Shown: positions 2,876-18,793, numbered from the stretch's first letter. The stretch is 24,210 nucleotides of DNA from IMGVR_UViG_3300016457_001310:1-24210; one strand, 5' to 3'. Notes: generated from the sequence alone by a model not told the origin. A program made the numbers and translations.

Positions 2876-4624
2876 TTATATTCGCTTCCTCAGCTCCTCG
2901 TAGGTTGCCCTTATGTATATGAGCGCTAGGTGGAACTGGAGGAAGTGCTCGGGCATTATCAGGTCGCCCGTCATCACAAGCATCGGGTTGCTGACGATGT
3001 CGTAGGCCTCCGAGAGGAGGCTCTCAACCTCTGGTATGCTCTCTCCCGTAGCATCCCTGTACTTGTGGTAGGTATCCCTAACGAACCTGTACAGATGTGC
3101 GCACGCCTCCATCATGTAGTTGACATGCATAGCCCTAACCTCGTCACCGCTCGAAACTGGGCTCAGCTTGGAGAGCACGCTCTCTAGGTCGCTTAGGGAG
3201 CTGGGGTAGGGCTCCGAGGTTATGGAGCTCCACAGCTCCTTGGTACCCTCCTTAACCCTGTGGATCAGGTTCAGCGGATCGTTGAAGTGGCTAGCCCTGA
3301 TAACCTCACCGAGGAGGGGCTTCTCAAGCCTATAGCCGTACACCTCCACGATCCACTTAAGGATCTCGTCTATAGCCCTACCAGCCTCGCGAAGCACCTT
3401 CAGAGGCTCCTTCCTGGTTAGGTACTCTGGAACCACATAGTCCCTCAGGATGGTCACTACCAGCCGCACAATCGATACGCTGTCGAGAGCCGTAGAAGCG
3501 TCTAGAAGGCTCTTCAGAGCGCTACGAGCAACCCTATCAAGAGCCTTAACAGCGTCCGCTACCGTGGAAGCAACAAGCTTGGCTACCCTATCCAGCGACA
3601 GAACCACATCGCTTACCGCTCTCCTAGGCTCCTTCGAGGCTAGGTACTCAGGTACAACAACGTCGAGAACGCTCCTAAGAGTAGACCTAGATACGTAGTC
3701 GCTAGCCACAGTCGCGTCATAAACCCTGAGAGGAATGCCACGACCAACCCAGTCGGTTGCCAACACAGTATCGGGTAACCTAATGGAGGGTTCCTTCGTA
3801 GCCCTATCCAGAGCCCTAGCAACATCGCTCAGGACCTTGCCCCTAACCGTCGATAGCACGTACTCGGGTACAACAGCGTCGTACACGTTCTTAACCAGCG
3901 CCCTAAAGACGCTGTCCCTAGGTATCAACGACTCGCGCCACGCCTTGGTGCTGTGCCTAACCAGGCTATCTATGCCCCTACACGCATCGAGAACCACCAC
4001 CATAGAGGTCTTCGAGAGCGCATCCGTAGCCCTACCGATGTCCCTAACCAGCTTCGCACCCTCCTTCGATAGCCTATCAAGCAACACCCCCGCATCCACC
4101 AGCGTGCGGACGAAGAAGGCTGAAACCCTAGCGAGATCTGTTAGCTTCAGAGAATCCGCCACCACCTTAGCGCTCAGCCTGCTCAGAGCATCCACAGCCC
4201 TGCCACTATCCGCTAGGGATCTCCTGAAGTGAACAGCCCTCGACACGGAGTCTACAACACTCGTCGCCTCCCTACCCACCTTCAGGGGCGCCTTGACGAG
4301 CATATCGGCTACCGCACCAGAATCCACAAACGCGCGCACGAAGTGTGCAGACACGGAGAATCCGTCTCTGCTGGTCACCGACTCGCGTACCGAGCCAGCA
4401 ACCAGCTTCGACAACGCATCGAGAATCTTAACGCCATCGAAGAGCACCTTGGATCTGTATGCTATTAAAGCATACTCGGGGATTGCATAGTCGTAGACAG
4501 CTACTGACCCCACCTTCGCAACAACGTCGCTCGCTAGAACAGTATCCGATACCTCCACGCAATAAGTAACCCCTACTAACGTGAATAGAGGTCTCTGAGC
4601 TGGTAACGCGCTGGTGAAGCTCAT
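2876..4624 (-). CDS. 582-aa repetitive structural (fibre shaft-like) protein
   Basis: About 20 degenerate D-x5-D units rich in V/A/S/R, with four (I/V)PEY variants. The C-terminal domain has three G(D/E)-x-(I/V)-x3-H repeats (GEVIRASHFN, GDEVRAMHVN, GDLIMPEHF). GGTGA RBS. Confidence 0.75.
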   Translation of the reverse strand: MSFTSALPAQRPLFTLVGVTYCVEVSDTVLASDVVAKVGSVAVYDYAIPEYALIAYRSKVLFDGVKILDALSKLVAGSVRESVTSRDGFSVSAHFVRAFVDSGAVADMLVKAPLKVGREATSVVDSVSRAVHFRRSLADSGRAVDALSRLSAKVVADSLKLTDLARVSAFFVRTLVDAGVLLDRLSKEGAKLVRDIGRATDALSKTSMVVVLDACRGIDSLVRHSTKAWRESLIPRDSVFRALVKNVYDAVVPEYVLSTVRGKVLSDVARALDRATKEPSIRLPDTVLATDWVGRGIPLRVYDATVASDYVSRSTLRSVLDVVVPEYLASKEPRRAVSDVVLSLDRVAKLVASTVADAVKALDRVARSALKSLLDASTALDSVSIVRLVVTILRDYVVPEYLTRKEPLKVLREAGRAIDEILKWIVEVYGYRLEKPLLGEVIRASHFNDPLNLIHRVKEGTKELWSSITSEPYPSSLSDLESVLSKLSPVSSGDEVRAMHVNYMMEACAHLYRFVRDTYHKYRDATGESIPEVESLLSEAYDIVSNPMLVMTGDLIMPEHFLQFHLALIYIRATYEELRKRI

Positions 4625-4658
4625 CGCCGATCACTTCTACCCGCTCCCACTCATCCAG

Positions 4659-4664
4659 AAAAAA
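4659..4664 (-). terminator. Possible oligo-T terminator
   Basis: T6 tract on the minus strand about 25 nt after the stop of the ORF at 4691-5083, in a short intergenic gap. Confidence 0.35.
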
Positions 4665-4690
4665 CATGTAGTGGACTCGGAGAGATAGCT

Positions 4691-5083
4691 CTACCTCCTT
4701 CCCAGCCTCTTCCTGAGCTCGGAGAGCGGCATACCGTCAGGGCACTTGACCGCACCGTAGAACTTCTCCTTCCATGTATAGGGGATCCACCTATAGCCTC
4801 CACACCGCTTCCAGTCGTGTAGAAGCGTGTAGAAGATCACCGTTATCAGGACGGCTATGCCCCACATACCGAAGAGCACAGCTATGAGAAAAAGGAAATC
4901 AGCGTATACCCTACCCCTAAGAGGGTAGTGCCTCCCATACGGGCTCCTAGACATGACGTGGTCGGCGAGAGCCCTCTTCACCCTCCGCTTGAACTCCCTC
5001 GGGCAGAGGATAGACGTTAGCCTACCGAAGGTGTAGAGCATGTACTGCTCAAGAGTCATCCCCTTGCCCAGCTTCCAACCCAT
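4691..5083 (-). CDS. Basic membrane protein of about 130 aa
   Basis: Track ORF 4691-5098. The ATG at 5083 with GAGGAG RBS, just after the previous stop, is the likelier start. Long hydrophobic segment FLFLIAVLFGMWGIAVLITVIFYTLL. Confidence 0.7.
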   Translation of the reverse strand: MGWKLGKGMTLEQYMLYTFGRLTSILCPREFKRRVKRALADHVMSRSPYGRHYPLRGRVYADFLFLIAVLFGMWGIAVLITVIFYTLLHDWKRCGGYRWIPYTWKEKFYGAVKCPDGMPLSELRKRLGRR

Positions 5084-5084
5084 G

Positions 5085-5453
5085 CTAGATCTCCTCAAGC
5101 ACTTGAACGACGAACCAGTAGGGGAAGCTTCTGAGTGTGCCCTGTGTCTGGGTTATCGTAACCCTGGGCTGGGCATCCTTTGGAAGCGTCATCGAGAGCA
5201 GGTGCACAACGGGGTTATCGAGAGGCCCGTCAACCGCTATGGTATCCAGCTTCCTCCTGTTAGACCCGTCGACAGCTATGTAGATAACCAGCTTCACCGA
5301 GTCACCGCTCTGGAGCTGCGATAGATCTACGTAGCCCTCCAGGATTATCGCGTTCTCGTATGTCCCGAGGTTGATCAGATCGGTCTCCACGTTCAGATCG
5401 CTGGGCGTTACGGTGCCTCGGTACTCCTCCTTACGCTTTATCCTGACTACCAT
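5085..5453 (-). CDS. 122-aa beta-rich putative structural protein, paralog A of 191-559
   Basis: Same length as and collinear with 191-559. Shared blocks GTV-PSDLN-ET, EGY-DLSQL, YIAVDG and RVTITQTQGTLRSFPY. GAGGT RBS. Confidence 0.85.
   Translation of the reverse strand: MVVRIKRKEEYRGTVTPSDLNVETDLINLGTYENAIILEGYVDLSQLQSGDSVKLVIYIAVDGSNRRKLDTIAVDGPLDNPVVHLLSMTLPKDAQPRVTITQTQGTLRSFPYWFVVQVLEEI
5118..5166 (+). repeat. 49-bp perfect direct repeat, copy 2
   Basis: Identical to 224-272. Confidence 0.95.
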
Positions 5454-5465
5454 TGCTAGGCTACC

Positions 5466-6017
5466 TCACCTGCTCATCTGTATGTAGTACCTAATCGTGA
5501 TGGCGTCCCCAGCGTCGAAGTTCACTGGGACTGGGTTGAACGTCTTCCTAGCCAGCAACACACCACCAGAGGACGCGTTGAAGACCCCAGCCTCGGAGAT
5601 CTCCATACTCCCGCTAAGCCCGTCCTCGCTTGAGAACGTAGCTTCCAGGAGCGCGGTATCGCCCTCAACATCGGTCGTTGTCTGGCTAACCGAAGCCTGC
5701 TTCCTAGCGACCTCGGCTTCGAGAGCCGTATCAGTAACGGATTCGGATGTAGTGCCAGTACCGATAGCAACATACGTGAACGGCGTGCCACCGAGGTTGA
5801 ACACCAGCTTAATGATCTCCGCGAGCCCAGCGTTCGTCACAACGTTCTTCCTGAAGTAGAAGAGTACCTGGGTCTCTGGCAGAACACCCTTGGGGATGAC
5901 AGGCACTGGGTTACCGCGAGCAAGCGTAACCAGGTACTTCGGTCTACCCCTCCTGTCCCAGACTATGACCTCTACCCAGCCAGCGATAACCACCCTAGAG
6001 CTGTCTCCCCTCCACAT
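5466..6017 (-). CDS. Tail-collar / tail-fibre-anchor-like protein
   Basis: Motif series N-VVTNAG...YVAIGTG...TDTALEAEVAR...ISEAGVFN...LLARKTF...ITIRY matches the pattern of phage tail-collar fibre (DUF3751-like) N-terminal domains. Confidence 0.75.
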   Translation of the reverse strand: MWRGDSSRVVIAGWVEVIVWDRRGRPKYLVTLARGNPVPVIPKGVLPETQVLFYFRKNVVTNAGLAEIIKLVFNLGGTPFTYVAIGTGTTSESVTDTALEAEVARKQASVSQTTTDVEGDTALLEATFSSEDGLSGSMEISEAGVFNASSGGVLLARKTFNPVPVNFDAGDAITIRYYIQMSR

Positions 6018-6053
6018 AGCTGGCTTCCCCCATCAAAGCCCTTCTCCTACCAC

Positions 6054-6061
6054 CTTATAAA
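6054..6061 (-). promoter_or_regulatory. TATA box candidate for the fibre cluster
   Basis: TTTATAAG on the minus strand in an intergenic gap, about 37 nt upstream of the ATG at 6017. Confidence 0.55.
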
Positions 6062-6068
6062 TACGCTT

Positions 6069-6197
6069 CTATCCCTGCACAACGTACTTGACCCTGCCCT
6101 CCCTGTCCCTAACAATGATCTCAAGCCTAACGGATGTCCTAGCCGAGTCGAGCCTATGCGGTCTATAGCTCCGCCTAGCAACGGTCTCCCGCTTCAC
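6069..6197 (-). CDS. 42-aa mini-ORF duplicating the N-terminal hairpin of the downstream 183-aa protein
   Basis: Not in the ORF track. MKRETVARRSYRPHRLDSARTSVRLEIIVRDREGRVKYVVQG*. LEIIVRDREGRVKYVV aligns with VEVIVWDRRGRPKYLV of 5466-6017. G-rich RBS upstream of the GTG. Confidence 0.6.
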   Translation of the reverse strand: MKRETVARRSYRPHRLDSARTSVRLEIIVRDREGRVKYVVQG

Positions 6198-6247
6198 CTT
6201 CTCTACCCCAACCCTCTACGCGCTAGGAAAGTATATACCTCTATACA

Positions 6248-7369
6248 CTAGTCGGATACTATCTCCACCAGCCTCAGAGCTATGATATCCCATCTATACT
6301 CCTTCGAGAGCACCTTCTCTCTCCATTCCCGTACCCTCGCCTTGTACTCGTCTAGGTTATCCAGGATTACGTGCAACTTGTTGAGAGCGTCCTCGACATC
6401 GACAGCGTAGCCGTAGCCACCGTGAAAGGCGTTTCCTGGTAGGGGCTGAACCCTCCTACCCTTCTTGACCCACAGGAACGGGGGTACGTACTCAGACCAC
6501 GAACCGTACTCGCATGCGAGCACTGGCACACCCCTAGCAAGCGATTCTAGAGCAACCATCTCGAAGCCACCGCCTCGGCTGAACATCAGGGTTACGTCAG
6601 CCATATCGAAGAGCGCCATCTTCTCGTAGTCGCTCAGCCACTCGTATACCTGAAGTGCGCCGTACTGCATGACCTGCTGGTACTCGGGTATGTTGGGGAA
6701 CACCGTCTTCAGGACCAGAGCAACATCCTTCCTCTCCCTAGCAAGCCTGGTATACACCTCGTACACCTCTGGCCAGCCCTTCCTCTCACCGCTGTGGACA
6801 AGGAAGAACAGTATGAACTTCTTGTTCCTCCTCATCTTATAGAGGTAGAGCTGCACAAGCGATGAGCTGAGCCTCTGCCTCGGCGCGATCTCCCATACAT
6901 TGGGTGTTGTATACCACTCAGGGTCGACACCGTGCGGAAGCCTGTAGACCCTAGCCCTCACCCCAGACCTCCTAGCCACCTCCACACAGAAGCTGGAGGG
7001 CACGACGAACTTGTCGAACCTGTTAGCTATGGAGACCGCGTAGTCGGTATACGCATCGGAGTCGCAGACATCTATACCTATGAGCTGGTCGTAGAAGCCC
7101 CTCCACCACTGGTAGTAGTCCTCCCTAAACCTACCCCATATATCCTTCCTGCTCTCAAGAACCCTAAACATGATGAAGAAGCCTGGGTGTAGAATCAGGG
7201 AGTACTTGGTCGATGGCGTGAACGCTGGTACCATAAGCTCGTCGAGCTCGTACACCGACACATACCCAAGCCTCCTCATATACTCCAGATGCTTCCTCGC
7301 CACCAGCGTGAAGCTGACGGTGTGCCACTGAGGATAGGCATAGAGTATCGGCTTCAAGACTAGCCCCAC
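6248..7369 (-). CDS. GT-B fold family 4 glycosyltransferase, archaeal filamentous virus type
   Basis: VVPSSF, LPHGVD, ERKG and FSRGGGFEMVALESLARGVPVL, a variant of the E-x7-E motif with Gly at the first Glu. Confidence 0.9.
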   Translation of the reverse strand: MGLVLKPILYAYPQWHTVSFTLVARKHLEYMRRLGYVSVYELDELMVPAFTPSTKYSLILHPGFFIMFRVLESRKDIWGRFREDYYQWWRGFYDQLIGIDVCDSDAYTDYAVSIANRFDKFVVPSSFCVEVARRSGVRARVYRLPHGVDPEWYTTPNVWEIAPRQRLSSSLVQLYLYKMRRNKKFILFFLVHSGERKGWPEVYEVYTRLARERKDVALVLKTVFPNIPEYQQVMQYGALQVYEWLSDYEKMALFDMADVTLMFSRGGGFEMVALESLARGVPVLACEYGSWSEYVPPFLWVKKGRRVQPLPGNAFHGGYGYAVDVEDALNKLHVILDNLDEYKARVREWREKVLSKEYRWDIIALRLVEIVSD

Positions 7370-7413
7370 CCCACTCCATGTAGATGGGTAACCGTGGAGA
7401 AGCTGAAAAACGT

Positions 7414-8127
7414 CTAATGCTGTACCAAGCCAAGCGCCTTCACTACCCAGTAAACGACCTCAGATGCCCCCCTAGGCGGCTCGTCAAAGTTGGTGATAGC
7501 CGTGGCGTCCCTAATGTGGTAGAGCGCGGGTATAGGAGTGTCCCTAACATCGCTCGTAAAGCCGTGGTCTGACACCACCAGCCACCGCCTAGGCTTGAAC
7601 GTCTCTATCAGGTCGAGAGCCAGCTTGCATGCCAGGTCGTACCACTCTATCGCTGTTCTAAGCGCGTCTATGCTTGGTATGGTGGAGAAGAAGTGGTGAT
7701 GAGGCTGATCGGGTACGGGGTACCAAACGAAGAGGATATCCGCATCCCCGTTAGCCTTTACGTAGCTGTGGTACTTCATCAACACCTCCCTAAACCGCTC
7801 CTTAGGCGGCGAGAAGAAGTCCACCCAGTTAGCAGGCCTCGGAACGCCGTGGTATATCGGTGGCATGCATGCTGGTATATTGATAGCCTTTACCCTCCTA
7901 CCCGTAACGAGATCCCATACCCAGGTCGTTATGGTTCCAGGAACGAACTTCCTTAGCTGGAAGAAGGTTGCCATAACCGTGGGGGTCTCTGGAATCACAT
8001 CGACGTACATCATGCAGCGCTTAGCCCCTGGATAGCTCCAGAGCCTACGTATACTCTCTCCCCACCAACAAAACACATTTGCAAAGACGTAGCTGAGACC
8101 GTCTAGCACCACCACCAGGACATCCAT
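7414..8127 (-). CDS. Alkaline phosphatase superfamily protein (phosphodiesterase/sulfatase/phosphotransferase-like)
   Basis: Metal-binding motifs in canonical order: VVVLDG, Thr nucleophile in ETPT, PDQPHH, VVSDHGF and a late His (LYH). Confidence 0.8.
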   Translation of the reverse strand: MDVLVVVLDGLSYVFANVFCWWGESIRRLWSYPGAKRCMMYVDVIPETPTVMATFFQLRKFVPGTITTWVWDLVTGRRVKAINIPACMPPIYHGVPRPANWVDFFSPPKERFREVLMKYHSYVKANGDADILFVWYPVPDQPHHHFFSTIPSIDALRTAIEWYDLACKLALDLIETFKPRRWLVVSDHGFTSDVRDTPIPALYHIRDATAITNFDEPPRGASEVVYWVVKALGLVQH

Positions 8128-8131
8128 GGTA

Positions 8132-8425
8132 TCACGTCGGAGGCGCCCAGTGCACGCCTAGAATAGCCGCCACGAAGCTGAGGACTATGACCATAACCGT
8201 TATCATCGCGCCGACAAGAAACTTTATCAAGCCGTTGCGTCTCTCGACAAGCTTGTTTATGAGCCGCTTTATCTCGCTGACATCGTTCTCGATGTTATCG
8301 ACTCGTTGCTCTACCCGTGCTAATCTCTCGCGCATATCCATTACCATGAGCATCAGCTCCCTTATTTCCTGGTTGGGTACGGGATCATTTGAAGCCCCAT
8401 ACTGCGAAGTTCCCTCCCTCGACAT
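8132..8425 (-). CDS. Coiled-coil protein with C-terminal TM helix
   Basis: Heptads MRERLARVEQRVDNIENDVSEIKRLI, then hydrophobic LIKFLVGAMITVMVIVLSFVAAILGV. The start may be downstream of 8425 because it overlaps the MTase by 41 nt. Confidence 0.75.
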   Translation of the reverse strand: MSREGTSQYGASNDPVPNQEIRELMLMVMDMRERLARVEQRVDNIENDVSEIKRLINKLVERRNGLIKFLVGAMITVMVIVLSFVAAILGVHWAPPT

Positions 8426-8951
8426 AGCCCACCCCCCGAAAACCTATCCACTCAAGCAAGCGCTTTAGGGTTTTCGGATGAAGTACATGGAAATGCGTCT
8501 CGTCGCTGAGAGCCGTGGGGTCTGAGCACGTAACAGATTGTATCCACACAGCGCCCCCAGGCTTCAGAACGCGGTACACCTCGGTAAGCGCCTTCACGTA
8601 GTCAACGATGTGCTCAAGAACCTCTATCATGATAACGACATCGAAGCGGTTCGCAGGGAACTCCAGAGCCTCGGCATTCATGATCAGGTGCGGGTAGTCC
8701 TTCCTCCGATCTGGGGGCTCCACGATGTCTATACCCCAGTAGTTCCAAGAGTACTGGGGTCTCGGAAAGTTCTCGTGTAGCCAACCCACGAGAAAGCCCT
8801 TGAAGCAACCCACCTCCAGGATATCGAGGTGCCCGCGCTCCTTGAAGAGCCTCTCTAGGAACTCCTTAAGCTCCTTGCGCCTAACCAGTAGGAAGCCCCA
8901 GTAGTGCTTCTTGCCAGCCTCGATCATCGCGCTCTTCAGCTCCATGGTCAC
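8385..8951 (-). CDS. Class I SAM-dependent methyltransferase (small-molecule/glycan type)
   Basis: ILEVGC-KG motif I, WGIDI, NAEALEFPANRFDVV, EVLEHI, EVYRVLKPGG. No DPPY/NPPY or PC motif of DNA methyltransferases. Confidence 0.9.
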   Translation of the reverse strand: MTMELKSAMIEAGKKHYWGFLLVRRKELKEFLERLFKERGHLDILEVGCFKGFLVGWLHENFPRPQYSWNYWGIDIVEPPDRRKDYPHLIMNAEALEFPANRFDVVIMIEVLEHIVDYVKALTEVYRVLKPGGAVWIQSVTCSDPTALSDETHFHVLHPKTLKRLLEWIGFRGVGYVEGGNFAVWGFK

Positions 8952-9349
8952 ACCCTAGCAATGATCCACCAGTTGCCGTCCCGATCCGCTACCAGGATAA
9001 CCGCCTCACCGAACGATGCTAGCTCTATAGACGACGAGTTCTCGACGTACTTGCCGCTGGGCGGCGCTATCGTTACGGTGTTCGTCGAGGTATCGATCTT
9101 CTTAACTATGACCGTCACACCGTTGGCTACGGATGGTAACGTGATCGTTACTGACCCCCCAGACGCATCTACGAGGACAAGCTCGTAGGGGTTGGCGGTG
9201 TAGTTAGCCGTAACCTTAACTATCTTGGATATCCTGACCGCTACCGAAGCCATGTCGTAGAGCTCGTTGAGAGCATCAACAACCGAGTTAGCCCATGTTG
9301 ACGATGCTCTCTGGAGCGGCTTCACGTATAGATTATCGTACTTACCCAT
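8948..9349 (-). CDS. 133-aa fibre-associated protein
   Basis: N-terminal helix PLQRASSTWANSVVDALNELY, then TANYTA...LVDASGGSVTITLP...G-TVIVKKID...NTVTI...W, a beta module common in phage tail fibre proteins. Confidence 0.7.
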   Translation of the reverse strand: MGKYDNLYVKPLQRASSTWANSVVDALNELYDMASVAVRISKIVKVTANYTANPYELVLVDASGGSVTITLPSVANGVTVIVKKIDTSTNTVTIAPPSGKYVENSSSIELASFGEAVILVADRDGNWWIIARV

Positions 9350-9356
9350 AGACGCC

Positions 9357-10703
9357 TCACCCCAGACCCCTCTTCCTCAGGAACCTGGTTCTCTCTCTGA
9401 ACCTAAGAGAGGAGAAGGTTCTTAGATGGGTTCTGACAGCGTTGTACAGCTTCTCAAGCACGCTCCTATCCAAGCCGCTTGAGCTCCACTTGTCTAGCCA
9501 CCAGCTCTTCAGCTCGTCCTCGGACATGGTTCTGAGAGCGCCGTCTCCCCATCTATGCGGAGACGCCATGATCGCGAAGAGCTGTAGAACAGCGGACTTG
9601 TACATCCTCATGGTTACTGGGTCTACCGAGCCAAGCATGTTCCTAACCGTGTTGTAAACAACCCTCTCAAGGAACATCCTCTGCGATACTGGCAGAGCAA
9701 AGGTCTCGACACGCTCGCTAGCCGTCCACTGAGTCCTCTCCTCGTATGTCTGGTAGTTAGCCACAGCAAGGGCTGTAGCATGTATCCTGTTAACGAAGTT
9801 GCGCCACACAGCATCCACCAGCATCGTGACGATCGGTGGCGTGAGCTTGTACGGATGCACAACATCGCACCAGTGGAAGTAGTCCCATGGATACTCGTCC
9901 CAGTAGCCACACGCCTGGAAGTCTATCAGGTCCTCGTACTCGACCTCAACCTCCTGCAAGTCGTAGTTTATGTACGTAACCCTACCCGCGCTACCCTCCT
10001 TAGCCCACAGAGAGAAGTCCCACCATCCGTAGTCCCATGTAAGGGCCTGCTCCTTGACCGAGAAGATCGCTACCAGCCTATTGAAGAGGTTCCTAGCGAG
10101 CTCTGGGTTCATATTCAGGTTCCTAGCGATAGCTTCTACCCTATCCCTAGCCGTCCTCACGTCACCCCTCTTCTTTAGGAAGGCGAACAGCGTCGATTTG
10201 AAGAACTCCCTAACGGCTATCGGGTCGTAGTAGGAGTACCCATACCTAGAGATATCGTAGTAACCCTTCTCGGTTACGGAGGGCTTAAGGGCCTCCGCGA
10301 ACGGCGACTCCATGAACGCCTCCATGAAGTCGACCACGCTGTAGACCGACTTGATCATAATGTCCTCGAACTGCGGGTAGAGCTCCGCTATAACGTCGTC
10401 GATGCTTACCCTCTCAAGCTTTATCAGGACTCCCTTAGCGAACTCCTCGGGTGACGGAAGTTCGACACTCCATAACAGGTTCCATGGCTCTACCTCGCTT
10501 ATCGGTATACCCAGAAGAAAGAGGGATACAAGGGTAGAGAGAAGGGTGTCGCTCACTACCTGATCCGAGTAGTCCCTAAGCCAGTCAAAAATATTGAAAG
10601 ACTGGCTATAGACAGACCACGCTGCATCGTCCGACAGCGCCTTGTACCAGTACTTGCGCTTCTGATCCAGTAGCTTCCACGCCTCCCTGCTCAGAGCACC
10701 CAC
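9357..10703 (-). CDS. 448-aa putative minor structural protein
   Basis: Repeated aromatic-acid motifs GYYDISRYGYSYYDP, TWDYGWWDFSLW and GYWDEYPWDYFHW. Lies just downstream of the giant protein, as the second minor structural gene does in rudiviruses (from recall, not searched). Confidence 0.75.
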   Translation of the reverse strand: MGALSREAWKLLDQKRKYWYKALSDDAAWSVYSQSFNIFDWLRDYSDQVVSDTLLSTLVSLFLLGIPISEVEPWNLLWSVELPSPEEFAKGVLIKLERVSIDDVIAELYPQFEDIMIKSVYSVVDFMEAFMESPFAEALKPSVTEKGYYDISRYGYSYYDPIAVREFFKSTLFAFLKKRGDVRTARDRVEAIARNLNMNPELARNLFNRLVAIFSVKEQALTWDYGWWDFSLWAKEGSAGRVTYINYDLQEVEVEYEDLIDFQACGYWDEYPWDYFHWCDVVHPYKLTPPIVTMLVDAVWRNFVNRIHATALAVANYQTYEERTQWTASERVETFALPVSQRMFLERVVYNTVRNMLGSVDPVTMRMYKSAVLQLFAIMASPHRWGDGALRTMSEDELKSWWLDKWSSSGLDRSVLEKLYNAVRTHLRTFSSLRFRERTRFLRKRGLG

Positions 10704-10909: not shown

Positions 10910-13900
10910 CTACCTACCGTATATTGTCTGTATGCGTTTCTTCTCAAGCTCCGCACCGTCAACTATCAGCGCTATCTCATCATCGGTGAGACCGTACTTC
11001 TTGAGAGCCTGTAGCTTCTGTATCAGGGTGTTCCTATCTATGATACCGTTGGCGTAGGCGTAGACCAGCCTGTTGCGGTACCACGCTATCTGCCTCCACA
11101 CGATGCGGTTCCTAGCCAGCTTCTTGTAGTACTCTATCTGCTTCTGGTACCTCGCTACGTCTATACCCCTAGCTCTGAGCACATCGCTGAGGATCTGCTC
11201 CCACTCTGGTATGTACCTGGCATCGGCTACGAGCTGGCGGATGGTCGGTACCAGCCAGCTAAGCACCCTGTACTCCTTGCGTAGCTGGAGAGCGAGGCTG
11301 AACACCTCAAGCTCCTTCCCGACCCAGCCGCCCTTCCTCATCCACTCAGCTACCTTGCTAGCGACCTCGCGAGACACCGTGAAGTACTCGTAGAGCCTCC
11401 TGTACTCAGCAACGAGCTGGTTCACCTCGCCCGCTATAGACCTAGCCTCTATGTACCTCAGCCACAGATCGGCAAAGTCCTTGGGAACCCTCCTAAGCTG
11501 TAGCACCCTATCGATTATGGTTCTGGGCACCTCGATGTACTCGACCATGGACGCTATGGTTCCTAGGCTAGGTACGTACTCCCTAGCGGACTCTATGAGT
11601 AGCTCGTAGTATACGCGCTTCTCGATCAGCTCTATCTCCTTCGGGGTGAAGCCGTAGCTCTTAGCGTCGTCGAGGAGCTTCTTCCACTCATCCTCAGAGA
11701 TAACACCGTACCTGAGAGCCCTAGCAGCAACGCTTAGAACCGCCTTGTAGTCGCTCTTAACTGGCCTCACCTGTATGTATTTCAGCCATATATCTATCCA
11801 CTCCTGTGGAACCCTCCTAGCCTCAAGCACCTTCCTAATCAGATCCTCCTTGAGCACGAGATACTCAGCCAGCGTTGCGAGCATCGTCGGTGTCGGTAGG
11901 TAGGCTCTCCTAAGCTCCATAGCCTCGGCAATCTCCTCCTCCAGATCCACGCGCTCCTTGATGAACTCGATCTCCTTGGATGTGAAGCCGTACTGACCGA
12001 GCTTATCTATGAACTCCTCCAGCTCCTTCTTGGTGATAACACCGTACCTGAGAGCCCTTATCTTGACCGAGAGCAACGACTTGACATCGCTCTTAATAGG
12101 CTTAGCCTCTATGTACTTCTTCCAGTAGTCTATCCACTCATCGGCTACCCTATGGTACTTCAGAGCGCTCAGAACCTTGTCCTCGGGCAAGACAATGTAC
12201 TCAGCAAGTGTTGCGAGCTGCGACGGTGTTGGAATCCTAACCTTAGCCTCCTCCAGCTTCTCCTCCAAGTCTATCCTATCCCTAAGTATCTTGATCTCCT
12301 CGTCGGTGAAGCCGTACTCCTTAGCCTTATCGATTATCTCGTCAAGCCTCTTCTTCTCTATGACGTTACGTAGGTAGGCACGGATAGCCACAGATATGTA
12401 CGCCTTGTAGTCGCTCTTCAGCGGCTTTACCTCTATATACTTCTCCCATATCTCCCTCCACTTCTCGGATACGCCATACCTCTTCAGAGCCTCCTCAACG
12501 AGATCCTTGGGTAGCGCTAGGTACTCGGCTAGAACCGCCAGCGTCGATGGAGACGGAATCCTCTCCCTAGCCGCCTGCCTAAGCTCGTCTATCCTCCTCT
12601 CGAAGGCGGCTATAACGTTGTACATCACCCACTCATGAGGCGCTATACCGAACGCCTGGAACACGTCCCTGTTAGCGTCGTAGAACGCAAGCAGCTTCTT
12701 AGCCTCGTCAGCACCCTCGATAACCAGCTCACCGCCCCTCACGGTGAACTTCATAGAGTACTTACTGAGTATATCCACGACCTCGTCGATGCCCATACCC
12801 AGAGCAAGCGCGTTGTATATCCTGGTCCTGAGAAGCGTCAGCTCGTCCTGTATCGGCTTCCTAGCAACGTAGAGCCTCCAGTACTGAAGCTCGTCGCTCG
12901 GCATGTTGAAGTGCTCCAAAGCCTTCAGGCTCGTGCTGATGGCTTCGGGCACGATCTCTAGGAGGGTCGCGTAGGTTGTTAGACCAGGCGTGTACCAGAC
13001 CACGTTGGCGTCTATATACTTCTTGGCGAGATCCTCGGAGAAGCCCAGCTTCTTGAGTTGCTCGATAGCCTCCGAGACGGCTATCCTCCTCGATCTGAGC
13101 AGGTTGATGATCGCCTTAGCCTTGACCTCCCTCTCGAACCTATAGACCATGAACTCCACGGAGAGCTCTATCGCCTCCCTAACGATGGGGTGCTCATGCA
13201 TCTTCTCCACTAGCTTGGATACCCAGCCCTTGGCCTCGTCAATCGTTACATAGCCGTAGCGCAGAGCCCATAACACCGACCACAGCAGGTACCTAGCGTA
13301 GAACCTCGTGCGCTCCCTAGCCTCAAGCTCTATGATCGCCTCGGCATACTTGCTCCAGGCCTCCCAGTAGCCAGTATCTAGCACTAGGGACAGCTCCTTG
13401 CCAGTGAGGCTCTTTACCGTCTGCTTGAAGAACTTCTCGTTTATCGCGCTGACAATATCGGCAATGATCTCCCTAGCCTTGGCTGGATCCACCACGTAGT
13501 AGGCTACGCTGCGTATGATGTACCTATACGCCTCTCTGTAGATATCGAGAGCCCTATCCATAGTTGCCCTGATCTCCAGGAGCTTGGACTCGGCTGGTAG
13601 GAACGCTATCGGGTACTCAACGGTTGCCGATACCCAGTCCCTCTTCTCTAGGTCGAAGTAGCCTACCTCGAACTTAACCGTGAAGAAACCCGAGAGTAGC
13701 TGGTGTAGGTGGTCTAGGCTCCATATACCCTCCTTGTATAGGTTGATGAAGCCAGTTCTGAGCAGTGTGCGCTCCTCGGTTAGGGCGTTTATTGTCTCGG
13801 CTATCGCTACCCACGGTATCCAGTACGGGTGTATACCCGTAGCCTGCAACACCCTACAGAACTGCTTGAGGTCGAAGACTATCTCACCCTTCTTCAGGTA

Positions 13901-16900
13901 CTGGAGGTAGAGATCCGCCATCGGTCTAGCCGACGCAGTGGTGCCCTCGGGTATGAGACTCTTGGTTATCTCGTGGATAGCCTTCTTCAGACCGATGCCG
14001 TATGCAGACCAGTAGTCGAAGAGGCCCCACCTTGTCATCCATCTCAGGTCTATCTTGGTGGGTATGTCAGCCATAAGCTCGATCATTATGGCGTTATCGG
14101 TTGGCCACCCAGGTTGCCACGGAAACCTGGCATAGTCATGCCACTTCATGTAGGTGCTGATCATCTTTTGCAACAAATCATATCTGAAGTTCAGCTCCTT
14201 GGGAGCCACAGCCTTCACAACCGTTGGGTCTAGACCGAAGGTCTTCATTATGTTCTCGTCGACTGGTGCCTCAGGGTTCCACAGCTCACCAGCGATACCC
14301 CTCCAGAAGAACTCTGCTAGCTTCTCTGGCGGTGGGTACCTGTAGTGCAGTAAGTAGAACATGAACGCCACGTCTGGCGTGAAGCCGTGCATAGCCATAA
14401 CTGCCGCAAAGTGCCTTGGATCCTGTATGATGTCCCTCACCATCATCCTAGCTAGCTCGCTCGGGCTCGGTATTGCCCACACCATCGATACTGGGAAGAG
14501 CCTCTCCTTCCTGGTGTATGACGTAAACCTATCCCATATCCTCAGAGCCCCCAGCTCCCTATCGTAGAGCTCGGATACATTGCCGAGTTGCTTAGCGACC
14601 TCCTCAGCGAGCTTGGTATTGAGACCATAGATCCTCTCTATAAAGCCCTTGTAGATACCACCCATCCTGAGCTGGTCTACAAACATCTTGTAGTTGTCCA
14701 TGAGTATCGGTGTCGGTATAGACCTCCTAACCAAGTTGAGAGTGTGCTCCATTGGTGGAAGCTCGACGGTTACGTACTCGGTCAGGTTGTACCTAGTGAT
14801 TGCCCTGGTTGGCTCGGCCCACCATATCATGTGGCCTATGATCATGTACCTCGCTACGTCTGGCATGAACTTCTCGAACTGCGAAACAGCCTTCTCAAGA
14901 ACGTCCTTCAGCTTCAGTCTTATCCTAGCACCGACACCGAGTGGCTCACCACTTATCTCGGTATCTGGTAACGCAGATACCAAGGGCTTCAGTATGAGGC
15001 CAACACCGTAGATGGCGGCCGATATCAGCACGCCAACGTTGAGCAGGTTGTATATGAACCTCACGGGGTTCTTCTTGGCCTCCTCTATCACCTCGCCGAG
15101 CTTCTCGACCATTATCGGTGTGAGCGGTAGTAGTATAGCCTCGATTATGGGGAACCATGGAGACGCAAGTATCTCGTAGAGCGCTGGGCTAGACCTAGCC
15201 ACTATCAGGTTGGTTATAGCCTTCATAGCGTTGCCGATAGCTGTAGCGATATCCTTACCGACCTCTCCAATAACCGAGATAACAGTCATTACAGCTCTGC
15301 CTACCCACGAAGCAAGCGTCTTAAATGCCGAGACAAACCAGTTACCGAGTCCCGTCAGGATGTTCCATAGCCACTGCGCACCCTCGACGATCTTCTGTCC
15401 GATCCACTGTAGAGAGTTCCAAACTGTCGTTACTAGCCTCTCTGGTAGCTGCATAACCGCGTTCACGAAGCCAGTGAGGTAGACACCCACCAGCTTCAGG
15501 TTCTCAGACACCTTGGTAAGAGCCTCGCCTAGCTTCGCGAAGCCCTCGCTTACCAGCGTTCCGAGCTTGGTCAGGTAGTCCCACAGTGATATGCCTACCT
15601 CTCTAAGCGTCCCGAAGACGATCTGCGGAATCCTCTGGATCTCCTCAACAACACCGCTTACCAGCGACGGGAACTGCTCGGTGAAGAACCTAGCCACCGT
15701 CTCCAGTCCGCTCCTAACCATGTCTAGGAACTGGGTGAACGCCTCGGTAATGGGCTTCACAACGTTCTCGCTGATCCACGTGCCTAGACCAGCTACCGCC
15801 TCCTTTACCTGGTCTACGAGGCTCGGAAGCGTCTCGGCTATGAAGCTCCTAACGGTCTCGAACCCCTCGGAGATGAAGCCGATCAGGTTCTCAAGAGCGC
15901 CCCTAAGCGGGGCGAGCACGTTGCTCTGGATGAAGCTCCATATACCCGCTAGGGCGCTCTGGATCTGGCTAACCATGCTAGCGATAGCCGACGATACGCT
16001 TCCGAGACCCTGCTGAACCGCTGATAGGATGCTCTGCACAGCCGATGTTAGAGGCGCGATAACGTTCTGCTGGATCCACGAAGCGATCCCCGCAACAGCA
16101 TCGCGGAGCTGAGCAACGAAACTATTGATGTAGCTCGGCAACTCCTCGGTGAAGAACCTAGATACGGTCTGTAGACCGCTGTTGATGAAGTCTATGAAGC
16201 TCTGGAAAGCCGCTGTTAGGGGTGCTACAACGTTCTCCTGTACCCAGGTAGCTATTCCAGATAGCGTCTGCTGTATAGACGCAATAGCCTGGCTTACGAA
16301 TGCTGGTAGCTCCTCGGTGAAGAACCTGGAGACCGTCTCCAGACCGCTACTAATTAGCTGTATCAACTGGCTAAACGCGTTGCTCAGCGGTGCAACAACG
16401 TTCTCCTGGATCCAGGTGGCTAGCTCACCAACAGCTTGCTGAACCATCGCTGGTATCTGCGACACAAAGCTCGTCACGGTGTCGAGACCGCGTGTAATCG
16501 TCTCTATCAGGTTATTTACAGCGGTTAGCAGGGGTGTGACCACATAGTCGTTTATCAGCGTGCTGATGTCGCTTATCCATTTCTGGAGCTCCGCAAACAT
16601 CTGCGGAACGGTCTCGGTGAAGAACGTCGTTAGCGTCGATATGCCCTGGCTGATCCAGCTCATCAGGTTGTTAATAGCGCTGAACAGCGGGTCGATTATG
16701 TCCTCCTGTATCCAGCTCCATACACCGCTTATCTGGCGACTTAGCCAATCCAGAGCGTTCTCAACCGTGCCTGGTATCTGCTGTAGGAAGCTCCACACCT
16801 GCTCAACGAGGTTCTTGATCGTGTCGAGGAACGGCTTAGCTACCGTGTCCCAGAGCCTGCGACCTATCTCCTCGACCGTCTGAGCAAACCAGGAGGCGAG

Positions 16901-17746: not shown

Positions 17747-18793
17747 TCAACCCCCGTATGAGAACATTGCTAGGAACTCCCTATAAGTCTTCCGCATATC
17801 GAACTCGCGAGCTCTTTCCAGACACCTAGCCCTAACCTCGTCGCGGTTCTTAAGCACGTAGTCCTTTGCATATATAATCATCTCCGCGAAGTCCTTGGGG
17901 TCGTAGTAGTGCAACTCGTAGTCTATGGCACCTATCTCCGACCTGTATACAACGCTCCTCACCCTAACCCTGAAGCTGGTATCCTTCGTCGTTACCTCGC
18001 TCAGGGGCTCGTAATCAGCGTGCACAACTGGCTTGCCAGCCGCAAGAGCTTCTAGAACGGGATATCCGAAGCCCTCGGCTAGGGATGGCTGTGCATAGAG
18101 ATCGAAGCTGTGTAGAAGACCGTAGTACTCGTCCTCGCTCAGCTTGCCGAACTGGTCGATCAGTATAACGTTGTCAACACCGCTGTACTTCTCAACACCC
18201 TTGGAATCCGTTAGAACCACGAACTTTATCGACGGATCCCTATCGTGTACAAGCCTTATCACCTCAGCAAAGACATCGTGACCCTTACGCATGTAGCCAC
18301 CAGCTATGTACCCAACAACGAAGTCATCGTCTTTGAGACCCAGCTCCCTCCTAACGTACCTAGCCCTCCACCCGAACGCGCCAACAGCATCGATATCTAT
18401 ACCGTGGTAGACCACCTTGGTAACCGTTGCCCCAGCCTCCCTCAGCTTACTCATCGTGTACCGAGAGTTAGCGACAAAGCTGAGATCCCTATAGATCCAG
18501 GCATCGCCGTGAACGCGCCTAGCCCTCCCCTCTATAGTTGTGTAGAACACGCACTTCTTTCCGTACACAAGCATCTCCCTGCACACGAAAGCGAATGGAG
18601 ATACCCACGCTGGGTCGAAGGTCATCACAACGAGCACGCCGTCGACATCCTTGTAGACCTCTGGATCGGCATTGGGGTAGCCGAGGATATCCTTGACATT
18701 GACACCGCCCTCCCTGAGAACCGTAGCAACGTCGTTCGCTACGCGCTTAAGCGATGCGGATCTATGAGAAGTTAACACGATTACGCTAACCAT
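17747..18793 (-). CDS. GT-B fold family 4 glycosyltransferase
   Basis: FVANSRYT, VVYHGID, MRKG, and PSLAEGFGYPVLEALAAGKPVV with a canonical E-x7-E. Directly downstream of the capsid genes. Confidence 0.93.
   Translation of the reverse strand: MVSVIVLTSHRSASLKRVANDVATVLREGGVNVKDILGYPNADPEVYKDVDGVLVVMTFDPAWVSPFAFVCREMLVYGKKCVFYTTIEGRARRVHGDAWIYRDLSFVANSRYTMSKLREAGATVTKVVYHGIDIDAVGAFGWRARYVRRELGLKDDDFVVGYIAGGYMRKGHDVFAEVIRLVHDRDPSIKFVVLTDSKGVEKYSGVDNVILIDQFGKLSEDEYYGLLHSFDLYAQPSLAEGFGYPVLEALAAGKPVVHADYEPLSEVTTKDTSFRVRVRSVVYRSEIGAIDYELHYYDPKDFAEMIIYAKDYVLKNRDEVRARCLERAREFDMRKTYREFLAMFSYGG

What the first reader, a model, noticed from the sequence alone, without database searches (positions are those of the whole stretch)
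2876..9349. Tailed-phage-type fibre parts in a filamentous virus
Seen: a tail-collar-like protein (5466-6017), a 'VDASGGSVTITLP' fibre module (8948-9349) and GDxIxxxHxN repeats (582-aa protein), plus a 'SVDSAKIKDG' repeat in the adjacent 463-aa protein. No terminase, portal, HK97 capsid or tail tube gene is visible in the window. Established: these motifs are typical of Caudoviricetes tail fibre and baseplate proteins. Inference: an A-DNA filamentous virion capped by an elaborate terminal adsorption device built from modules shared with head-tail viruses, i.e. cross-realm module exchange.
Basis: partly seen in the sequence, partly recalled or inferred. Interest (0 to 1): 0.7.

Follow-up and report, generated by a model that had tools for sequence, protein, structure and literature searches.

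The report
Phage-like fibre proteins in rod virus
An uncultivated rod-shaped archaeal virus really does encode two small proteins related to tail-fibre parts of head-tail viruses, but one of them is an old, strongly conserved part of this virus group and not a recent import, and the other claimed fibre parts show no detectable link to head-tail viruses.

Summary
The window is a whole 24.2-kb IMG/VR contig of a rod-shaped archaeal virus of realm Adnaviria. It has two tandem SIRV2-type capsid genes, a glycosyltransferase, an Hjc resolvase and a 2082-aa homologue of the rudivirus minor structural protein. It has no terminase, portal, HK97 capsid or tail tube gene.

It is not a chimera. Capsid gene and fibre-like genes share one contig in four other assemblies, and about 20 longer loci keep the giant gene with the pair.

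Two claims hold:
- The 183-aa protein is homologous to tail-fibre or baseplate proteins of tailed viruses (tblastn 5e-10, hhalign 6e-16). Its model matches the HFTV1 tail and phage GP4 fibre I.
- The 133-aa protein matches haloarchaeal tailed-virus proteins (2e-15), the C-terminal ends of a tail fibre and a tail spike, and weakly T4 gp10.

Two claims do not hold. The 582-aa and 463-aa proteins have real motifs but no detectable tailed-virus relatives.

The 183-aa gene and the next 122-aa jelly-roll gene are the best-conserved cassette of a large metagenomic clade, and betalipothrixviruses carry the same fold. So the sharing is old for the 183-aa protein and probably horizontal only for the 133-aa protein. 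A role in adsorption at the virion ends is inferred, not shown.

The parts
19271..19627 (-). Major capsid protein copy 1 (118 aa), SIRV2 type
   Evidence: Pfam PF12193 Sulf_coat_C E 9e-12, above the cut-off.
18870..19244 (-). Major capsid protein copy 2 (124 aa), SIRV2 type
   Evidence: Pfam PF12193 E 1e-12. tblastn finds only rudivirus coat proteins, at 25-30% identity.
17747..18793 (-). GT4 glycosyltransferase (348 aa) next to the capsid genes
   Evidence: Pfam Glycos_transf_1 1e-14. It sits in the same position in relatives L005 and L006.
10910..17158 (-). Giant 2082-aa minor structural protein; likely forms the terminal fibres or their anchor
   Evidence: phrog_7334 8e-58. The C-terminal part (residues 1719-2066) matches the minor structural proteins of SIRV, ARV and SSRV1. 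The N-terminal part (residues 53-715) weakly matches tape-measure proteins. Conserved across the clade at 24-38% identity.
9357..10703 (-). 448-aa conserved clade protein of unknown function
   Evidence: Homologues at 24-32% identity lie near the giant gene in relatives. No family hit.
8948..9349 (-). 133-aa stand-alone fibre-end module (the VDASGGSVTITLP family)
   Evidence: tblastn: Halorubrum tailed virus 29 gp59 at 2e-15; the C-terminus of the Thermocrinis virus 'T7 tail fiber protein'; the C-terminus of the Gordonia phage tail spike. The family profile hits T4 gp10 residues 70-143 at E 1.3e-3. Only 8 metagenomic homologues, and present in 2 of 80 related loci.
8385..8951 (-). SAM-dependent methyltransferase (188 aa)
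   Evidence: Pfam Methyltransf_23 1e-19.
8132..8425 (-). 97-aa protein with a coiled coil and a C-terminal membrane helix
   Evidence: phrog_689 'holin' 1.7e-6; Pfam XhlA below the cut-off.
7414..8127 (-). 237-aa phosphodiesterase / alkaline-phosphatase-superfamily protein
   Evidence: Pfam PF01663 3.6e-6, 27.2 bits against a 23-bit cut-off.
6248..7369 (-). GT4 glycosyltransferase (373 aa), conserved in the clade
   Evidence: phrog_2170 1e-40; Pfam Glycos_transf_1. Relatives are 32-48% identical.
5466..6017 (-). 183-aa protein like the phage GP4 fibre I monomer (gp80): a conserved N-terminal beta-hairpin, a linker, and a C-terminal beta-sandwich
   Evidence: tblastn finds 26 Caudoviricetes records (best 5e-10). 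hhalign to the Pro-Nvie1 tail fibre: probability 98.6%, E 6e-16. AF2 model pLDDT 82. Foldseek: HFTV1 tail E 6.6e-7, GP4 fibre I probability 0.99, and 84 viral hits including AFV9 and SIFV2. More than 400 metagenomic homologues at 50-95% identity.
5085..5453 (-). 122-aa eight-stranded jelly-roll protein, the obligate partner of the 183-aa gene
   Evidence: Directly follows the 183-aa homologue in 71 of 80 related loci. AF2 model pLDDT 96.9. Foldseek gives only generic jelly-roll matches. No phage hit.
4691..5098 (-). 135-aa protein with one hydrophobic helix
   Evidence: Read from the sequence. No family hit.
2876..4624 (-). 582-aa repeat protein: about 20 repeats of 18 residues plus three C-terminal units of about 55 residues. 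Likely a variable stalk, adhesin or 'rope'
   Evidence: Autocorrelation peaks at lag 18; the C-terminal motif occurs three times against 0.014 expected. 232 homologues, driven by the repeats. Relatives are 326-1194 aa, always lie beside the 183+122 pair, and some carry DUF2341 or Kelch domains. No phage hit.
1468..2859 (-). 463-aa protein of a large family of unknown function; its base composition stands apart from the rest of the genome
   Evidence: More than 200 homologues at about 40% identity. It holds the same position after the pair in L101. GC3 is 0.46, against 0.60-0.74 in every other gene. No Pfam, PHROG, PDB or phage hit.
22893..23318 (-). Archaeal Holliday junction resolvase Hjc (141 aa)
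   Evidence: Pfam PF01870 2e-21.

Best explanation
The window is a nearly complete genome of an uncultivated rod-shaped archaeal virus of realm Adnaviria. It resembles rudiviruses and Ahmunviridae.

Downstream of its giant protein, which is related to the rudivirus minor structural protein, lies a conserved block of genes that most likely builds the structures at the virion ends used for adsorption. The block contains:
- A 183-aa protein homologous to the small fibre monomers and fibre or baseplate domains of tailed viruses (GP4 gp80 type).
- Its obligate 122-aa jelly-roll partner.
- A variable-length protein made of 18-residue repeats (582 aa here). In relatives this protein ends in sugar-binding-type domains.
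- In a few genomes only, a 133-aa module that tailed viruses use at the far end of fibres and spikes.
- Glycosyltransferases and a methyltransferase.

The link to tailed viruses is real for the 183-aa and 133-aa proteins only. For the 183-aa protein it is old: the gene is conserved across the clade and the fold is present in betalipothrixviruses. For the 133-aa protein it is probably horizontal.

Shown: the homologies, the gene linkage, the conservation and the folds. Inferred: presence in the virion, location at the ends, and a role in binding the host.
For: Virus identity:
- Two Sulf_coat_C capsid genes, with rudivirus coat proteins as the only tblastn hits.
- Hjc resolvase.
- The C-terminus of the giant protein matches rudivirus minor structural proteins.

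Not a chimera:
- A capsid gene, the giant gene and the 183+122 pair share one contig in L005 and L006 and in L064 and L065.
- About 20 further long loci keep the giant gene upstream of the pair.

183-aa protein:
- tblastn hits in 26 tailed-virus records.
- hhalign E 6e-16 to a provirus tail fibre that sits after the tape-measure and baseplate genes.
- A homologue lies directly after a true tape-measure gene in IMG/VR tailed contig L013.
- Confident model with top structural hits to the HFTV1 tail and GP4 fibre I, and 84 viral hits named tail fibre or tail collar fibre.

133-aa protein.

Old origin of the 183-aa fold in Adnaviria:
- AFV9 ORF164 and SIFV2 gp53-like share the fold.
- ORF164 lies next to ORF1170, a glycosyltransferase and a methyltransferase, and is conserved in five betalipothrixvirus genomes.

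Variable adhesin behaviour of the 582-like protein.

Known biology: the SIRV2 terminal fibres bind host pili (review PMC10791045).
Against: - No proteomic or imaging data exist, so virion location is unproven.
- The 183+122 pair is the most conserved part of the block: 46-84% and 45-82% identity, against 31-37% for the capsid proteins. Its branches in the domain tree are very short. That is the opposite of what a host-specificity tip would show.
- The window's own 183-aa protein misses the Pfam Gp80 cut-off.
- hhalign to AFV9 ORF164 is weak (probability 42%, E 2.6e-4).
- The gp10 match of the 133-aa family is borderline (E 1.3e-3) and that protein was not modelled.
- The 582-aa, 463-aa and 122-aa proteins have no specific known relatives.
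- The domain tree does not resolve the direction of transfer.
Confidence: 0.6

Rival explanations
1. Chain-like fibre. As in podophages GP4, VP1 and A1002, the 183-aa protein would form dimers strung one after another on an extended 'rope' by adding a strand to a beta-sheet. The rope would be the 18-residue-repeat region of the neighbouring 582-like protein, whose far end carries the real binding domain. The 183-aa protein would then be a conserved building block, not the specificity tip.
For: - Proteins with the gp80 fold and 140-171 aa are exactly such dimer-forming fibre monomers bound to a rope or fibre-dock domain (PMC13730344).
- The 183-aa protein has this fold and size.
- An 18-residue-repeat protein of variable length (326-1194 aa) lies next to the pair in most relatives. 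Some of these end in DUF2341 or Kelch domains.
- This model explains why the 183-aa protein is so conserved.
Against: - No complex was modelled.
- Several relatives (L076, L080, L096, L098) have no separate 18-residue-repeat protein within the stretch fetched.
- The A1002 paper never uses the word 'repeat', so it gives no sign of sequence repeats in the known ropes. Ropes of GP4 and VP1 were not examined.
- TM-scores to GP4 gp80 are modest (0.41 and 0.53).
- The role of the 122-aa partner is left unexplained.
Confidence: 0.2
2. The fibre-like proteins are not virion parts. They would act in or on the infected cell, for example as lectins, as surface or glycan modifiers working with the neighbouring glycosyltransferases, methyltransferase and phosphodiesterase, or in exclusion of other viruses.
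For: - The block is interleaved with sugar- and methyl-transfer enzymes.
- The strong conservation of the 183+122 pair is unusual for adsorption proteins.
- No virion data exist.
Against: - Every annotated homologue of the 183-aa and 133-aa proteins lies in the tail or baseplate gene cluster of a tailed virus, or is part of a fibre or spike protein.
- The block follows the giant structural protein in all relatives.
- In rudiviruses and lipothrixviruses, glycosyltransferase genes also sit among structural genes.
Confidence: 0.13
3. The contig is an assembly chimera that joins a filamentous virus to a head-tail virus.
For: The giant protein gives weak tape-measure hits, and two proteins have tailed-virus homologues.
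Against: - The same linkage of capsid gene, giant gene and 183+122 pair is seen in independent assemblies from other samples.
- Base composition is even except for one gene.
- No terminase, portal, HK97 capsid or tail tube gene is present.
- The giant protein shows no similarity to the true tape-measure proteins of L013 and L014.
Confidence: 0.02
4. The resemblance to tailed-virus fibres is only a common beta-sandwich shape reached by convergence, not shared descent.
For: This is true for the 122-aa protein, whose matches are generic jelly rolls with TM-scores of 0.45-0.64 across unrelated families. The 582-aa and 463-aa claims rest on short motifs only.
Against: For the 183-aa and 133-aa proteins the similarity is at sequence level: tblastn 5e-10 and 2e-15, hhalign E 6e-16, and shared motifs N..TN.GL and GTGT..TDT.
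Confidence: 0.05

Closest known systems
Rudiviridae (SIRV2, SSRV1, ARV1) and the metagenomic rod-virus families Ahmunviridae, Demeterviridae and Gaiaviridae
   Same: - SIRV2-type capsid protein (PF12193).
- Two adjacent capsid gene copies followed by a glycosyltransferase, as described for Hoswirudivirus, PBV300 and Demeterviridae (bioRxiv 10.1101/2025.08.23.671958).
- Hjc resolvase.
- Giant minor structural protein with a rudivirus-like C-terminus.
   Different: - Capsid identity to rudiviruses is only 25-30%, and there is no nucleotide match.
- The giant protein is twice as long.
- The 183+122 cassette, the 18-residue-repeat protein and the 463-aa family found no rudivirus record by tblastn.
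- PBV300 could not be fetched for comparison, so family placement is open.
Fibre monomers of podophage chain-like fibres: GP4 gp80 (Pfam PF23140, PDB 8jou), VP1 gp11, A1002 gp40 and gp41
   Same: - A small stand-alone protein (183 aa against 140-171 aa) with the same beta-sandwich fold. Foldseek probability 0.99.
- Many close homologues carry a PF23140 hit.
- An N-terminal extension of about 30 residues, as in A1002 gp41.
   Different: - It is encoded by a filamentous archaeal virus with no tail, nozzle or adaptor.
- The window protein itself is below the Pfam cut-off (23.0 against 27 bits).
- Its oligomeric state and docking partner are unknown.
- It is paired with a 122-aa jelly-roll gene that no phage record matched by tblastn.
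Betalipothrixvirus ORF164 (AFV9 gp56, with AFV3, 6, 7 and 8 homologues) and the SIFV2 gp53-like protein
   Same: - Same predicted fold: Foldseek E 1e-10 and 4e-6.
- Shared sequence motifs.
- Same neighbourhood: next to the giant ORF1170, a glycosyltransferase and a methyltransferase.
   Different: - Sequence similarity is marginal (hhalign probability 42%).
- No 122-aa partner; the next gene is ORF64b.
- These proteins are annotated only as hypothetical, and their function is untested.
T4 gp10 N-terminal domain, and the C-terminal end modules of tailed-virus fibres and spikes (Thermocrinis virus 'T7 tail fiber protein', Gordonia phage Turuncu tail spike, HRTV-29 gp59)
   Same: The 133-aa protein shares the '[VI]DASGG.VT[IV]TLP ... 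KK.D ... N.VT[IV]' core at 39-49% identity.
   Different: - Here it is a free-standing 133-aa protein placed after the 448-aa gene, in a virus without a baseplate.
- In tailed viruses it is usually one domain of a protein of 565-769 aa, or the N-terminal domain of gp10.

Membership tests
Adnaviria / Tokiviricetes rod-shaped viruses | Alpha-helical major capsid protein of the SIRV2 type | tested here: met
   Two genes hit PF12193 above the cut-off (48.7 and 45.7 bits against 25.2). Only rudivirus coat proteins are found by tblastn.
Adnaviria / Tokiviricetes rod-shaped viruses | Large minor structural (terminal fibre) protein of the rudivirus type | tested here: met
   phrog_7334 8e-58. tblastn links residues 1719-2066 to the minor structural proteins of SIRV, ARV and SSRV1.
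Adnaviria / Tokiviricetes rod-shaped viruses | Linear genome with inverted terminal repeats | tested here: inconclusive
   No terminal inverted repeat is present in the window. The contig is probably incomplete: an identical 133-aa protein lies on a 28.3-kb contig.
Adnaviria / Tokiviricetes rod-shaped viruses | A-form DNA in a helical virion | not testable with these tools
   Needs virion structure.
Caudoviricetes (head-tail viruses) | HK97-fold capsid protein, terminase large subunit, portal | tested here: not met
   None among the 30 ORFs scanned against Pfam, 20 of them also against PHROGs.
Pfam PF23140 Gp80 (podophage GP4 fibre I) | Sequence match above the curated cut-off | tested here: not met
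   23.0 bits against a 27-bit cut-off, E 1.1e-4. Many homologues at 55-85% identity do carry a precomputed PF23140 hit.
Pfam PF23140 Gp80 (podophage GP4 fibre I) | Same fold as the solved gp80 chain | tested here: met
   Foldseek to 8jou_a: probability 0.99, TM-scores 0.41 and 0.53, 133 aligned columns. The model has pLDDT 82.
Pfam PF23140 Gp80 (podophage GP4 fibre I) | Forms dimers docked on a rope or adaptor protein | not tested
Described for GP4, VP1 and A1002 in PMC13730344.
Phage tail collar domain (Pfam Collar) | Match to the Pfam tail-collar model | tested here: not met
   No such hit at E up to 0.01. The label comes only from the names of some homologues.
T4 gp10 N-terminal domain-like module (133-aa protein) | Sequence or fold match to gp10 residues 70-143 | tested here: inconclusive
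   The family profile hits gp10 at E 1.3e-3, 21.8 bits. The single sequence gives no hit. The fold was not predicted.
Tail tape-measure proteins (2082-aa protein) | Tape-measure homology in a tail gene context | tested here: inconclusive
   - Several tape-measure PHROGs at about 1e-19, and actinophage tape-measure proteins at about 20% identity.
- The matches fall in the repetitive helical part.
- No match to the true tape-measure proteins of L013 and L014.
- No tail tube or chaperone genes.

The most novel reading that the evidence does not exclude
This clade of rod-shaped archaeal viruses would carry podophage-style chain-like fibres at its ends. Dimers of the conserved 183-aa gp80-fold protein would be threaded on the 18-residue repeats of the adjacent 'rope' protein. 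That rope would be anchored through the giant protein and tipped by swappable binding domains (DUF2341, Kelch, the 463-aa and 133-aa modules). If so, one fibre-building principle is shared by two virus realms that have unrelated capsids, and it was already present in the common ancestor of this clade and the betalipothrixviruses.
Probability: 0.15. Interest if true: 0.75.

Novelty: new variant of a known kind. Interest (0 to 1): 0.5.

Why it matters
Little is known about how filamentous archaeal viruses recognise their hosts. In the papers read here the only entry step described in detail is the binding of SIRV2's terminal fibres to host pili.

This work points to a concrete, widely conserved gene cassette as the candidate end structure of a large uncultivated branch of Adnaviria. 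The cassette is the 183-aa fibre-monomer-like protein, a 122-aa jelly roll and a variable repeat protein. More than 400 homologues of the 183-aa protein exist in hot-spring and hydrothermal metagenomes.

It also shows that the same fold sits unannotated in cultured betalipothrixviruses, where it can be tested at the bench.

Finally, it gives a rare, statistically solid link between the structural gene sets of Adnaviria and Duplodnaviria. The papers I could search on rod-shaped archaeal viruses do not mention this link.

Tried and rejected
- Nucleotide search of the whole window against GenBank phages: no match.
- Single-sequence PDB searches for the 183-aa, 133-aa and 582-aa proteins: only noise. 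Profiles of the 183-aa, 122-aa and 463-aa families against the PDB: nothing useful.
- tblastn of the 582-aa, 463-aa and 122-aa proteins, and of the 582-like P0123, against phages: no match.
- Pfam and PHROG scans of 43 homologues of the 582-aa protein gave only Kelch, DUF2341, an unnamed PHROG and weak tape-measure hits. None is a tail-fibre family.
- Fetching Methanophagales virus PBV300 (OP413840) for comparison: not in the collection.
- Testing whether the giant protein is a tape-measure protein, by phmmer against the true tape-measure proteins of tailed contigs L013 and L014: no hit.
- Testing whether the 125-aa gene after the Pro-Nvie1 tail fibre is related to the 122-aa partner: it is not.
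- A tree of the gp80-like domain to get the direction of transfer. The deep branches are unresolved and the tailed-virus branches are long. It only shows that the clade can be a single group.
- Terminal inverted repeats: none in the window.
- The 133-aa, 582-aa and 463-aa proteins were not modelled, because only two structure jobs were allowed.

Full report
**What the window is.** All genes from 870 to 20974 lie on the minus strand, and base composition is even at about 53% GC.
- Two tandem genes (19271-19627 and 18870-19244) hit the SIRV2-type coat protein family PF12193 above the cut-off. Their only tblastn hits among 50,697 phage and archaeal-virus records are rudivirus coat proteins at 25-30% identity.
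- They are followed by a GT4 glycosyltransferase.
- Next comes a 2082-aa protein. Its C-terminus matches the minor structural proteins of SIRV, ARV and SSRV1.
- An archaeal Hjc resolvase is also present.
- None of the 30 ORFs scanned hits a terminase, portal, HK97 capsid or tail tube family.
- The window has no nucleotide match in GenBank phages. It equals the whole IMG/VR contig IMGVR_UViG_3300016457_001310. It has no terminal inverted repeats, so it is probably incomplete.
- Two capsid copies next to a glycosyltransferase is the layout reported for Hoswirudivirus, PBV300 (Ahmunviridae) and Demeterviridae (PMC9894754; bioRxiv 10.1101/2025.08.23.671958).

**Chimera test.**
- Contigs from other samples carry the same linkage. 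L005 (19.4 kb) and L006 (48.5 kb) both have a Sulf_coat_C capsid gene, a glycosyltransferase, a 442-452-aa protein, the giant protein, and the homologue of the 183-aa gene followed by a 122-aa gene.
- Four IMG/VR contigs of 28-41 kb and about 20 longer metagenome loci repeat the giant-gene-to-pair part of the block. L101, L109 and L110 do too. Two of the long loci, L064 and L065, also include a capsid gene.

The chimera explanation is refuted.

**The 183-aa protein (5466-6017).**
- Family hits: phrog_5417 (2e-18), phrog_4176 'tail fiber protein' (2e-14), and Pfam Gp80 (podophage GP4 fibre I) just below the cut-off. It does not hit the Pfam tail-collar domain.
- tblastn finds 26 records, all Caudoviricetes. 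Among them are a Nitrososphaera provirus 'putative tail fiber protein' (3e-9), Thermus phage P23-45 'baseplate protein' and a 'tail collar fiber protein'.
- The provirus protein aligns to the family profile with probability 98.6% and E 6e-16. It lies after the tape-measure and baseplate genes.
- In IMG/VR tailed contig L013 the homologue lies two genes after a true tape-measure gene.
- The AlphaFold model is good (pLDDT 82, pTM 0.79). It shows an N-terminal beta-hairpin (residues 11-32), a disordered linker (34-56) and a beta-sandwich (57-183).
- Its best matches among solved structures are a 953-residue chain of the tail of the archaeal tailed virus HFTV1 (E 6.6e-7) and fibre I of phage GP4 (probability 0.99). 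The output does not say which HFTV1 tail protein that chain is.
- Among predicted viral structures there are 84 hits at E up to 1e-3. Many are named tail fibre or tail collar fibre.

This part of the finding is confirmed in substance.

**The sharing is old, not special to this contig.**
- The third-best viral structural hit is a 164-aa protein of Acidianus filamentous virus 9 (E 1e-10). A SIFV2 'gp53-like' protein also matches.
- The only 164-aa ORF in the AFV9 record is ORF164. It lies beside the giant ORF1170, a glycosyltransferase and a methyltransferase. That neighbourhood mirrors the window.
- It shares the family motifs N..TN.GL and GTGT..TDT, although hhalign is weak (E 2.6e-4). It is conserved in five betalipothrixvirus genomes.
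- In metagenomes the 183-aa family has more than 400 members at 50-95% identity. Some sit in bins labelled Thermoprotei, Bathyarchaeia, Archaeoglobales and ANME-1.
- Of 80 loci found through the neighbouring 122-aa gene, 71 have the 183-aa homologue directly upstream. Most of the rest are cut by a contig end.
- The pair is the best-conserved part of the block. Identity to the window is 46-84% for the 183-aa protein and 45-82% for the 122-aa protein. The other shared proteins are lower: capsid 31-37%, giant 24-38%, 582-like 21-26%.
- In the domain tree the clade has end branches of about 0.1, against 2.5-9 for the tailed-virus homologues. The deep order is unresolved.

Such conservation does not fit a host-specificity tip. 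It fits a building block or adaptor.

**The 122-aa partner (5085-5453).** Its model is excellent (pLDDT 96.9) and is an eight-stranded jelly roll. The structural matches are generic: birnavirus VP2, lambda tail tip, Ena spore-appendage subunits, CBM6 and phage cement proteins. It has no PHROG, Pfam or phage hit. I cannot assign it to a family.

**The 133-aa protein (8948-9349).**
- The motif is present.
- tblastn finds:
  - Halorubrum tailed virus 29 gp59 (2e-15, 41% identity). This is a stand-alone gene between the tail completion gene and the DUF2961 and tail tube genes.
  - Halorubrum tailed viruses 4 and 27.
  - The last 80 or so residues of the 565-aa 'T7 tail fiber protein' of a Thermocrinis virus.
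  - The last residues of the 769-aa tail spike of Gordonia phage Turuncu.
  - Weakly, an internal part of a 1012-aa protein of a Nitrosopumilaceae spindle-shaped virus.
- The family profile hits the N-terminal domain of T4 baseplate protein gp10 at E 1.3e-3.
- Only eight metagenomic homologues were found, and only 2 of the 80 related loci have it. In those it always follows the 448-aa gene.

This is a true fibre or baseplate module with a patchy distribution. It is the best candidate for horizontal exchange.

**The 582-aa protein (2876-4624).**
- It has an 18-residue period over residues 20-430.
- It has no Pfam, PHROG, PDB or phage hit.
- A full-library search finds 232 relatives through the repeats.
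- Those checked lie in the same virus clade, right beside the 183+122 pair. They range from 326 to 1194 aa and keep the 18-residue period. Some carry DUF2341 or Kelch domains.

This is how a modular adhesin behaves. Nothing ties it to tailed viruses.

**The 463-aa protein (1468-2859).**
- The motif occurs once.
- The family has more than 200 members at about 40% identity with no annotation.
- In L101 it follows the pair just as in the window.
- The gene is a clear composition outlier: GC3 is 0.46, against 0.60-0.74 elsewhere. This suggests recent replacement from a relative with lower GC.
- It has no phage or PDB hit.

**How it probably works.**
- In SIRV2, terminal fibres bind host pili (PMC10791045). 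The giant protein here is the homologue of the rudivirus minor structural protein.
- I infer that the downstream block builds the end structures.
- A 2026 cryo-EM paper shows that gp80-fold proteins of 140-171 aa form dimers. These dimers are strung on a rope-like docking domain to make chain-like fibres in podophages GP4, VP1 and A1002 (PMC13730344).
- The 183-aa protein has that fold and size, and an 18-residue-repeat protein sits next to it in most relatives. A chain-like fibre on a repeat 'rope' is therefore an attractive reading, and it would explain the conservation.
- It is untested, however, and some relatives lack a separate repeat protein in the stretch fetched.

**Verdict.**
- The virus is a new member of a known realm.
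- The link between Adnaviria end-structure genes and tailed-virus fibre parts is real for two proteins. It is not mentioned in the rod-virus papers I could read, and a literature search for the link listed nothing relevant among its top results.
- It is best described as a new variant of a known theme, the sharing of host-recognition modules between unrelated viruses.

Noticed in passing
window 10910-17158 (-), residues 53-715 of the 2082-aa protein: The N-terminal third of the giant structural protein hits about 20 tape-measure PHROGs (E around 1e-19). It also matches actinophage tape-measure proteins at about 20% identity (E down to 1e-11). It shows no similarity to the true tape-measure proteins of tailed contigs L013 and L014. 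This is probably repetitive helical composition, but real kinship is not excluded.
   Followed up: partly
window 5085-6017 (-) and 80 related loci (L021-L100): The 183-aa plus 122-aa gene pair is more conserved across the clade than the capsid proteins. That is unexpected for adsorption proteins.
   Followed up: partly
window 1468-2859 (-): The 463-aa gene has GC 0.46 and GC3 0.46, while every other gene has GC3 of 0.60-0.74. This suggests recent acquisition or cassette replacement.
   Followed up: partly
window 8132-8425 (-): A 97-aa protein with a coiled coil and a C-terminal membrane helix hits a holin PHROG (1.7e-6) and, weakly, XhlA. It might act in egress. The pyramid-forming proteins known from rod viruses have the membrane helix at the N-terminus instead.
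   Followed up: no
window 7414-8127 (-), 8385-8951 (-), 6248-7369 (-): A phosphodiesterase-like protein, a SAM methyltransferase and a second GT4 glycosyltransferase are interleaved with the putative structural genes. This hints at modification of virion proteins or host glycans.
   Followed up: no
window 22893-23318 (-): An archaeal Holliday junction resolvase Hjc (E 2e-21). The paragraph of the Pfam scan does not say so, but from my own knowledge rudiviruses carry this enzyme.
   Followed up: no
window 20715-21245 (+): A 176-aa protein on the opposite strand has an N-terminal DUF7557 / VapB-antitoxin-like domain. It is likely a small DNA-binding regulator at the point where the gene strand switches.
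   Followed up: no
L005:7994-14032, L076, L096, L080: The giant proteins of relatives have different internal periods: 18 residues in L005, 11 in L076 and L096, 15 in L080. L005 has no separate 18-residue-repeat protein, so the repeat stalk may be fused into the giant protein there.
   Followed up: partly
L101 (NCBI GCA_028275925.1, 52.9-kb contig): A much larger relative with the same structural block also carries radical SAM, thymidylate synthase and DpdA-like genes. Genome size in this clade therefore ranges from about 20 kb to more than 50 kb.
   Followed up: no
L108:2600-5638 (Nitrosopumilaceae spindle-shaped virus ORF60): A weak match (E 4e-3) of the 133-aa module lies inside a 1012-aa protein of a spindle-shaped virus. 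The module may be shared by three virus morphotypes.
   Followed up: no
L020:32872-33366 (AFV9 ORF164): In cultured betalipothrixviruses, a protein annotated only as hypothetical has the tail-fibre-monomer fold and sits beside the giant ORF1170. This is a testable candidate for their terminal structures.
   Followed up: partly
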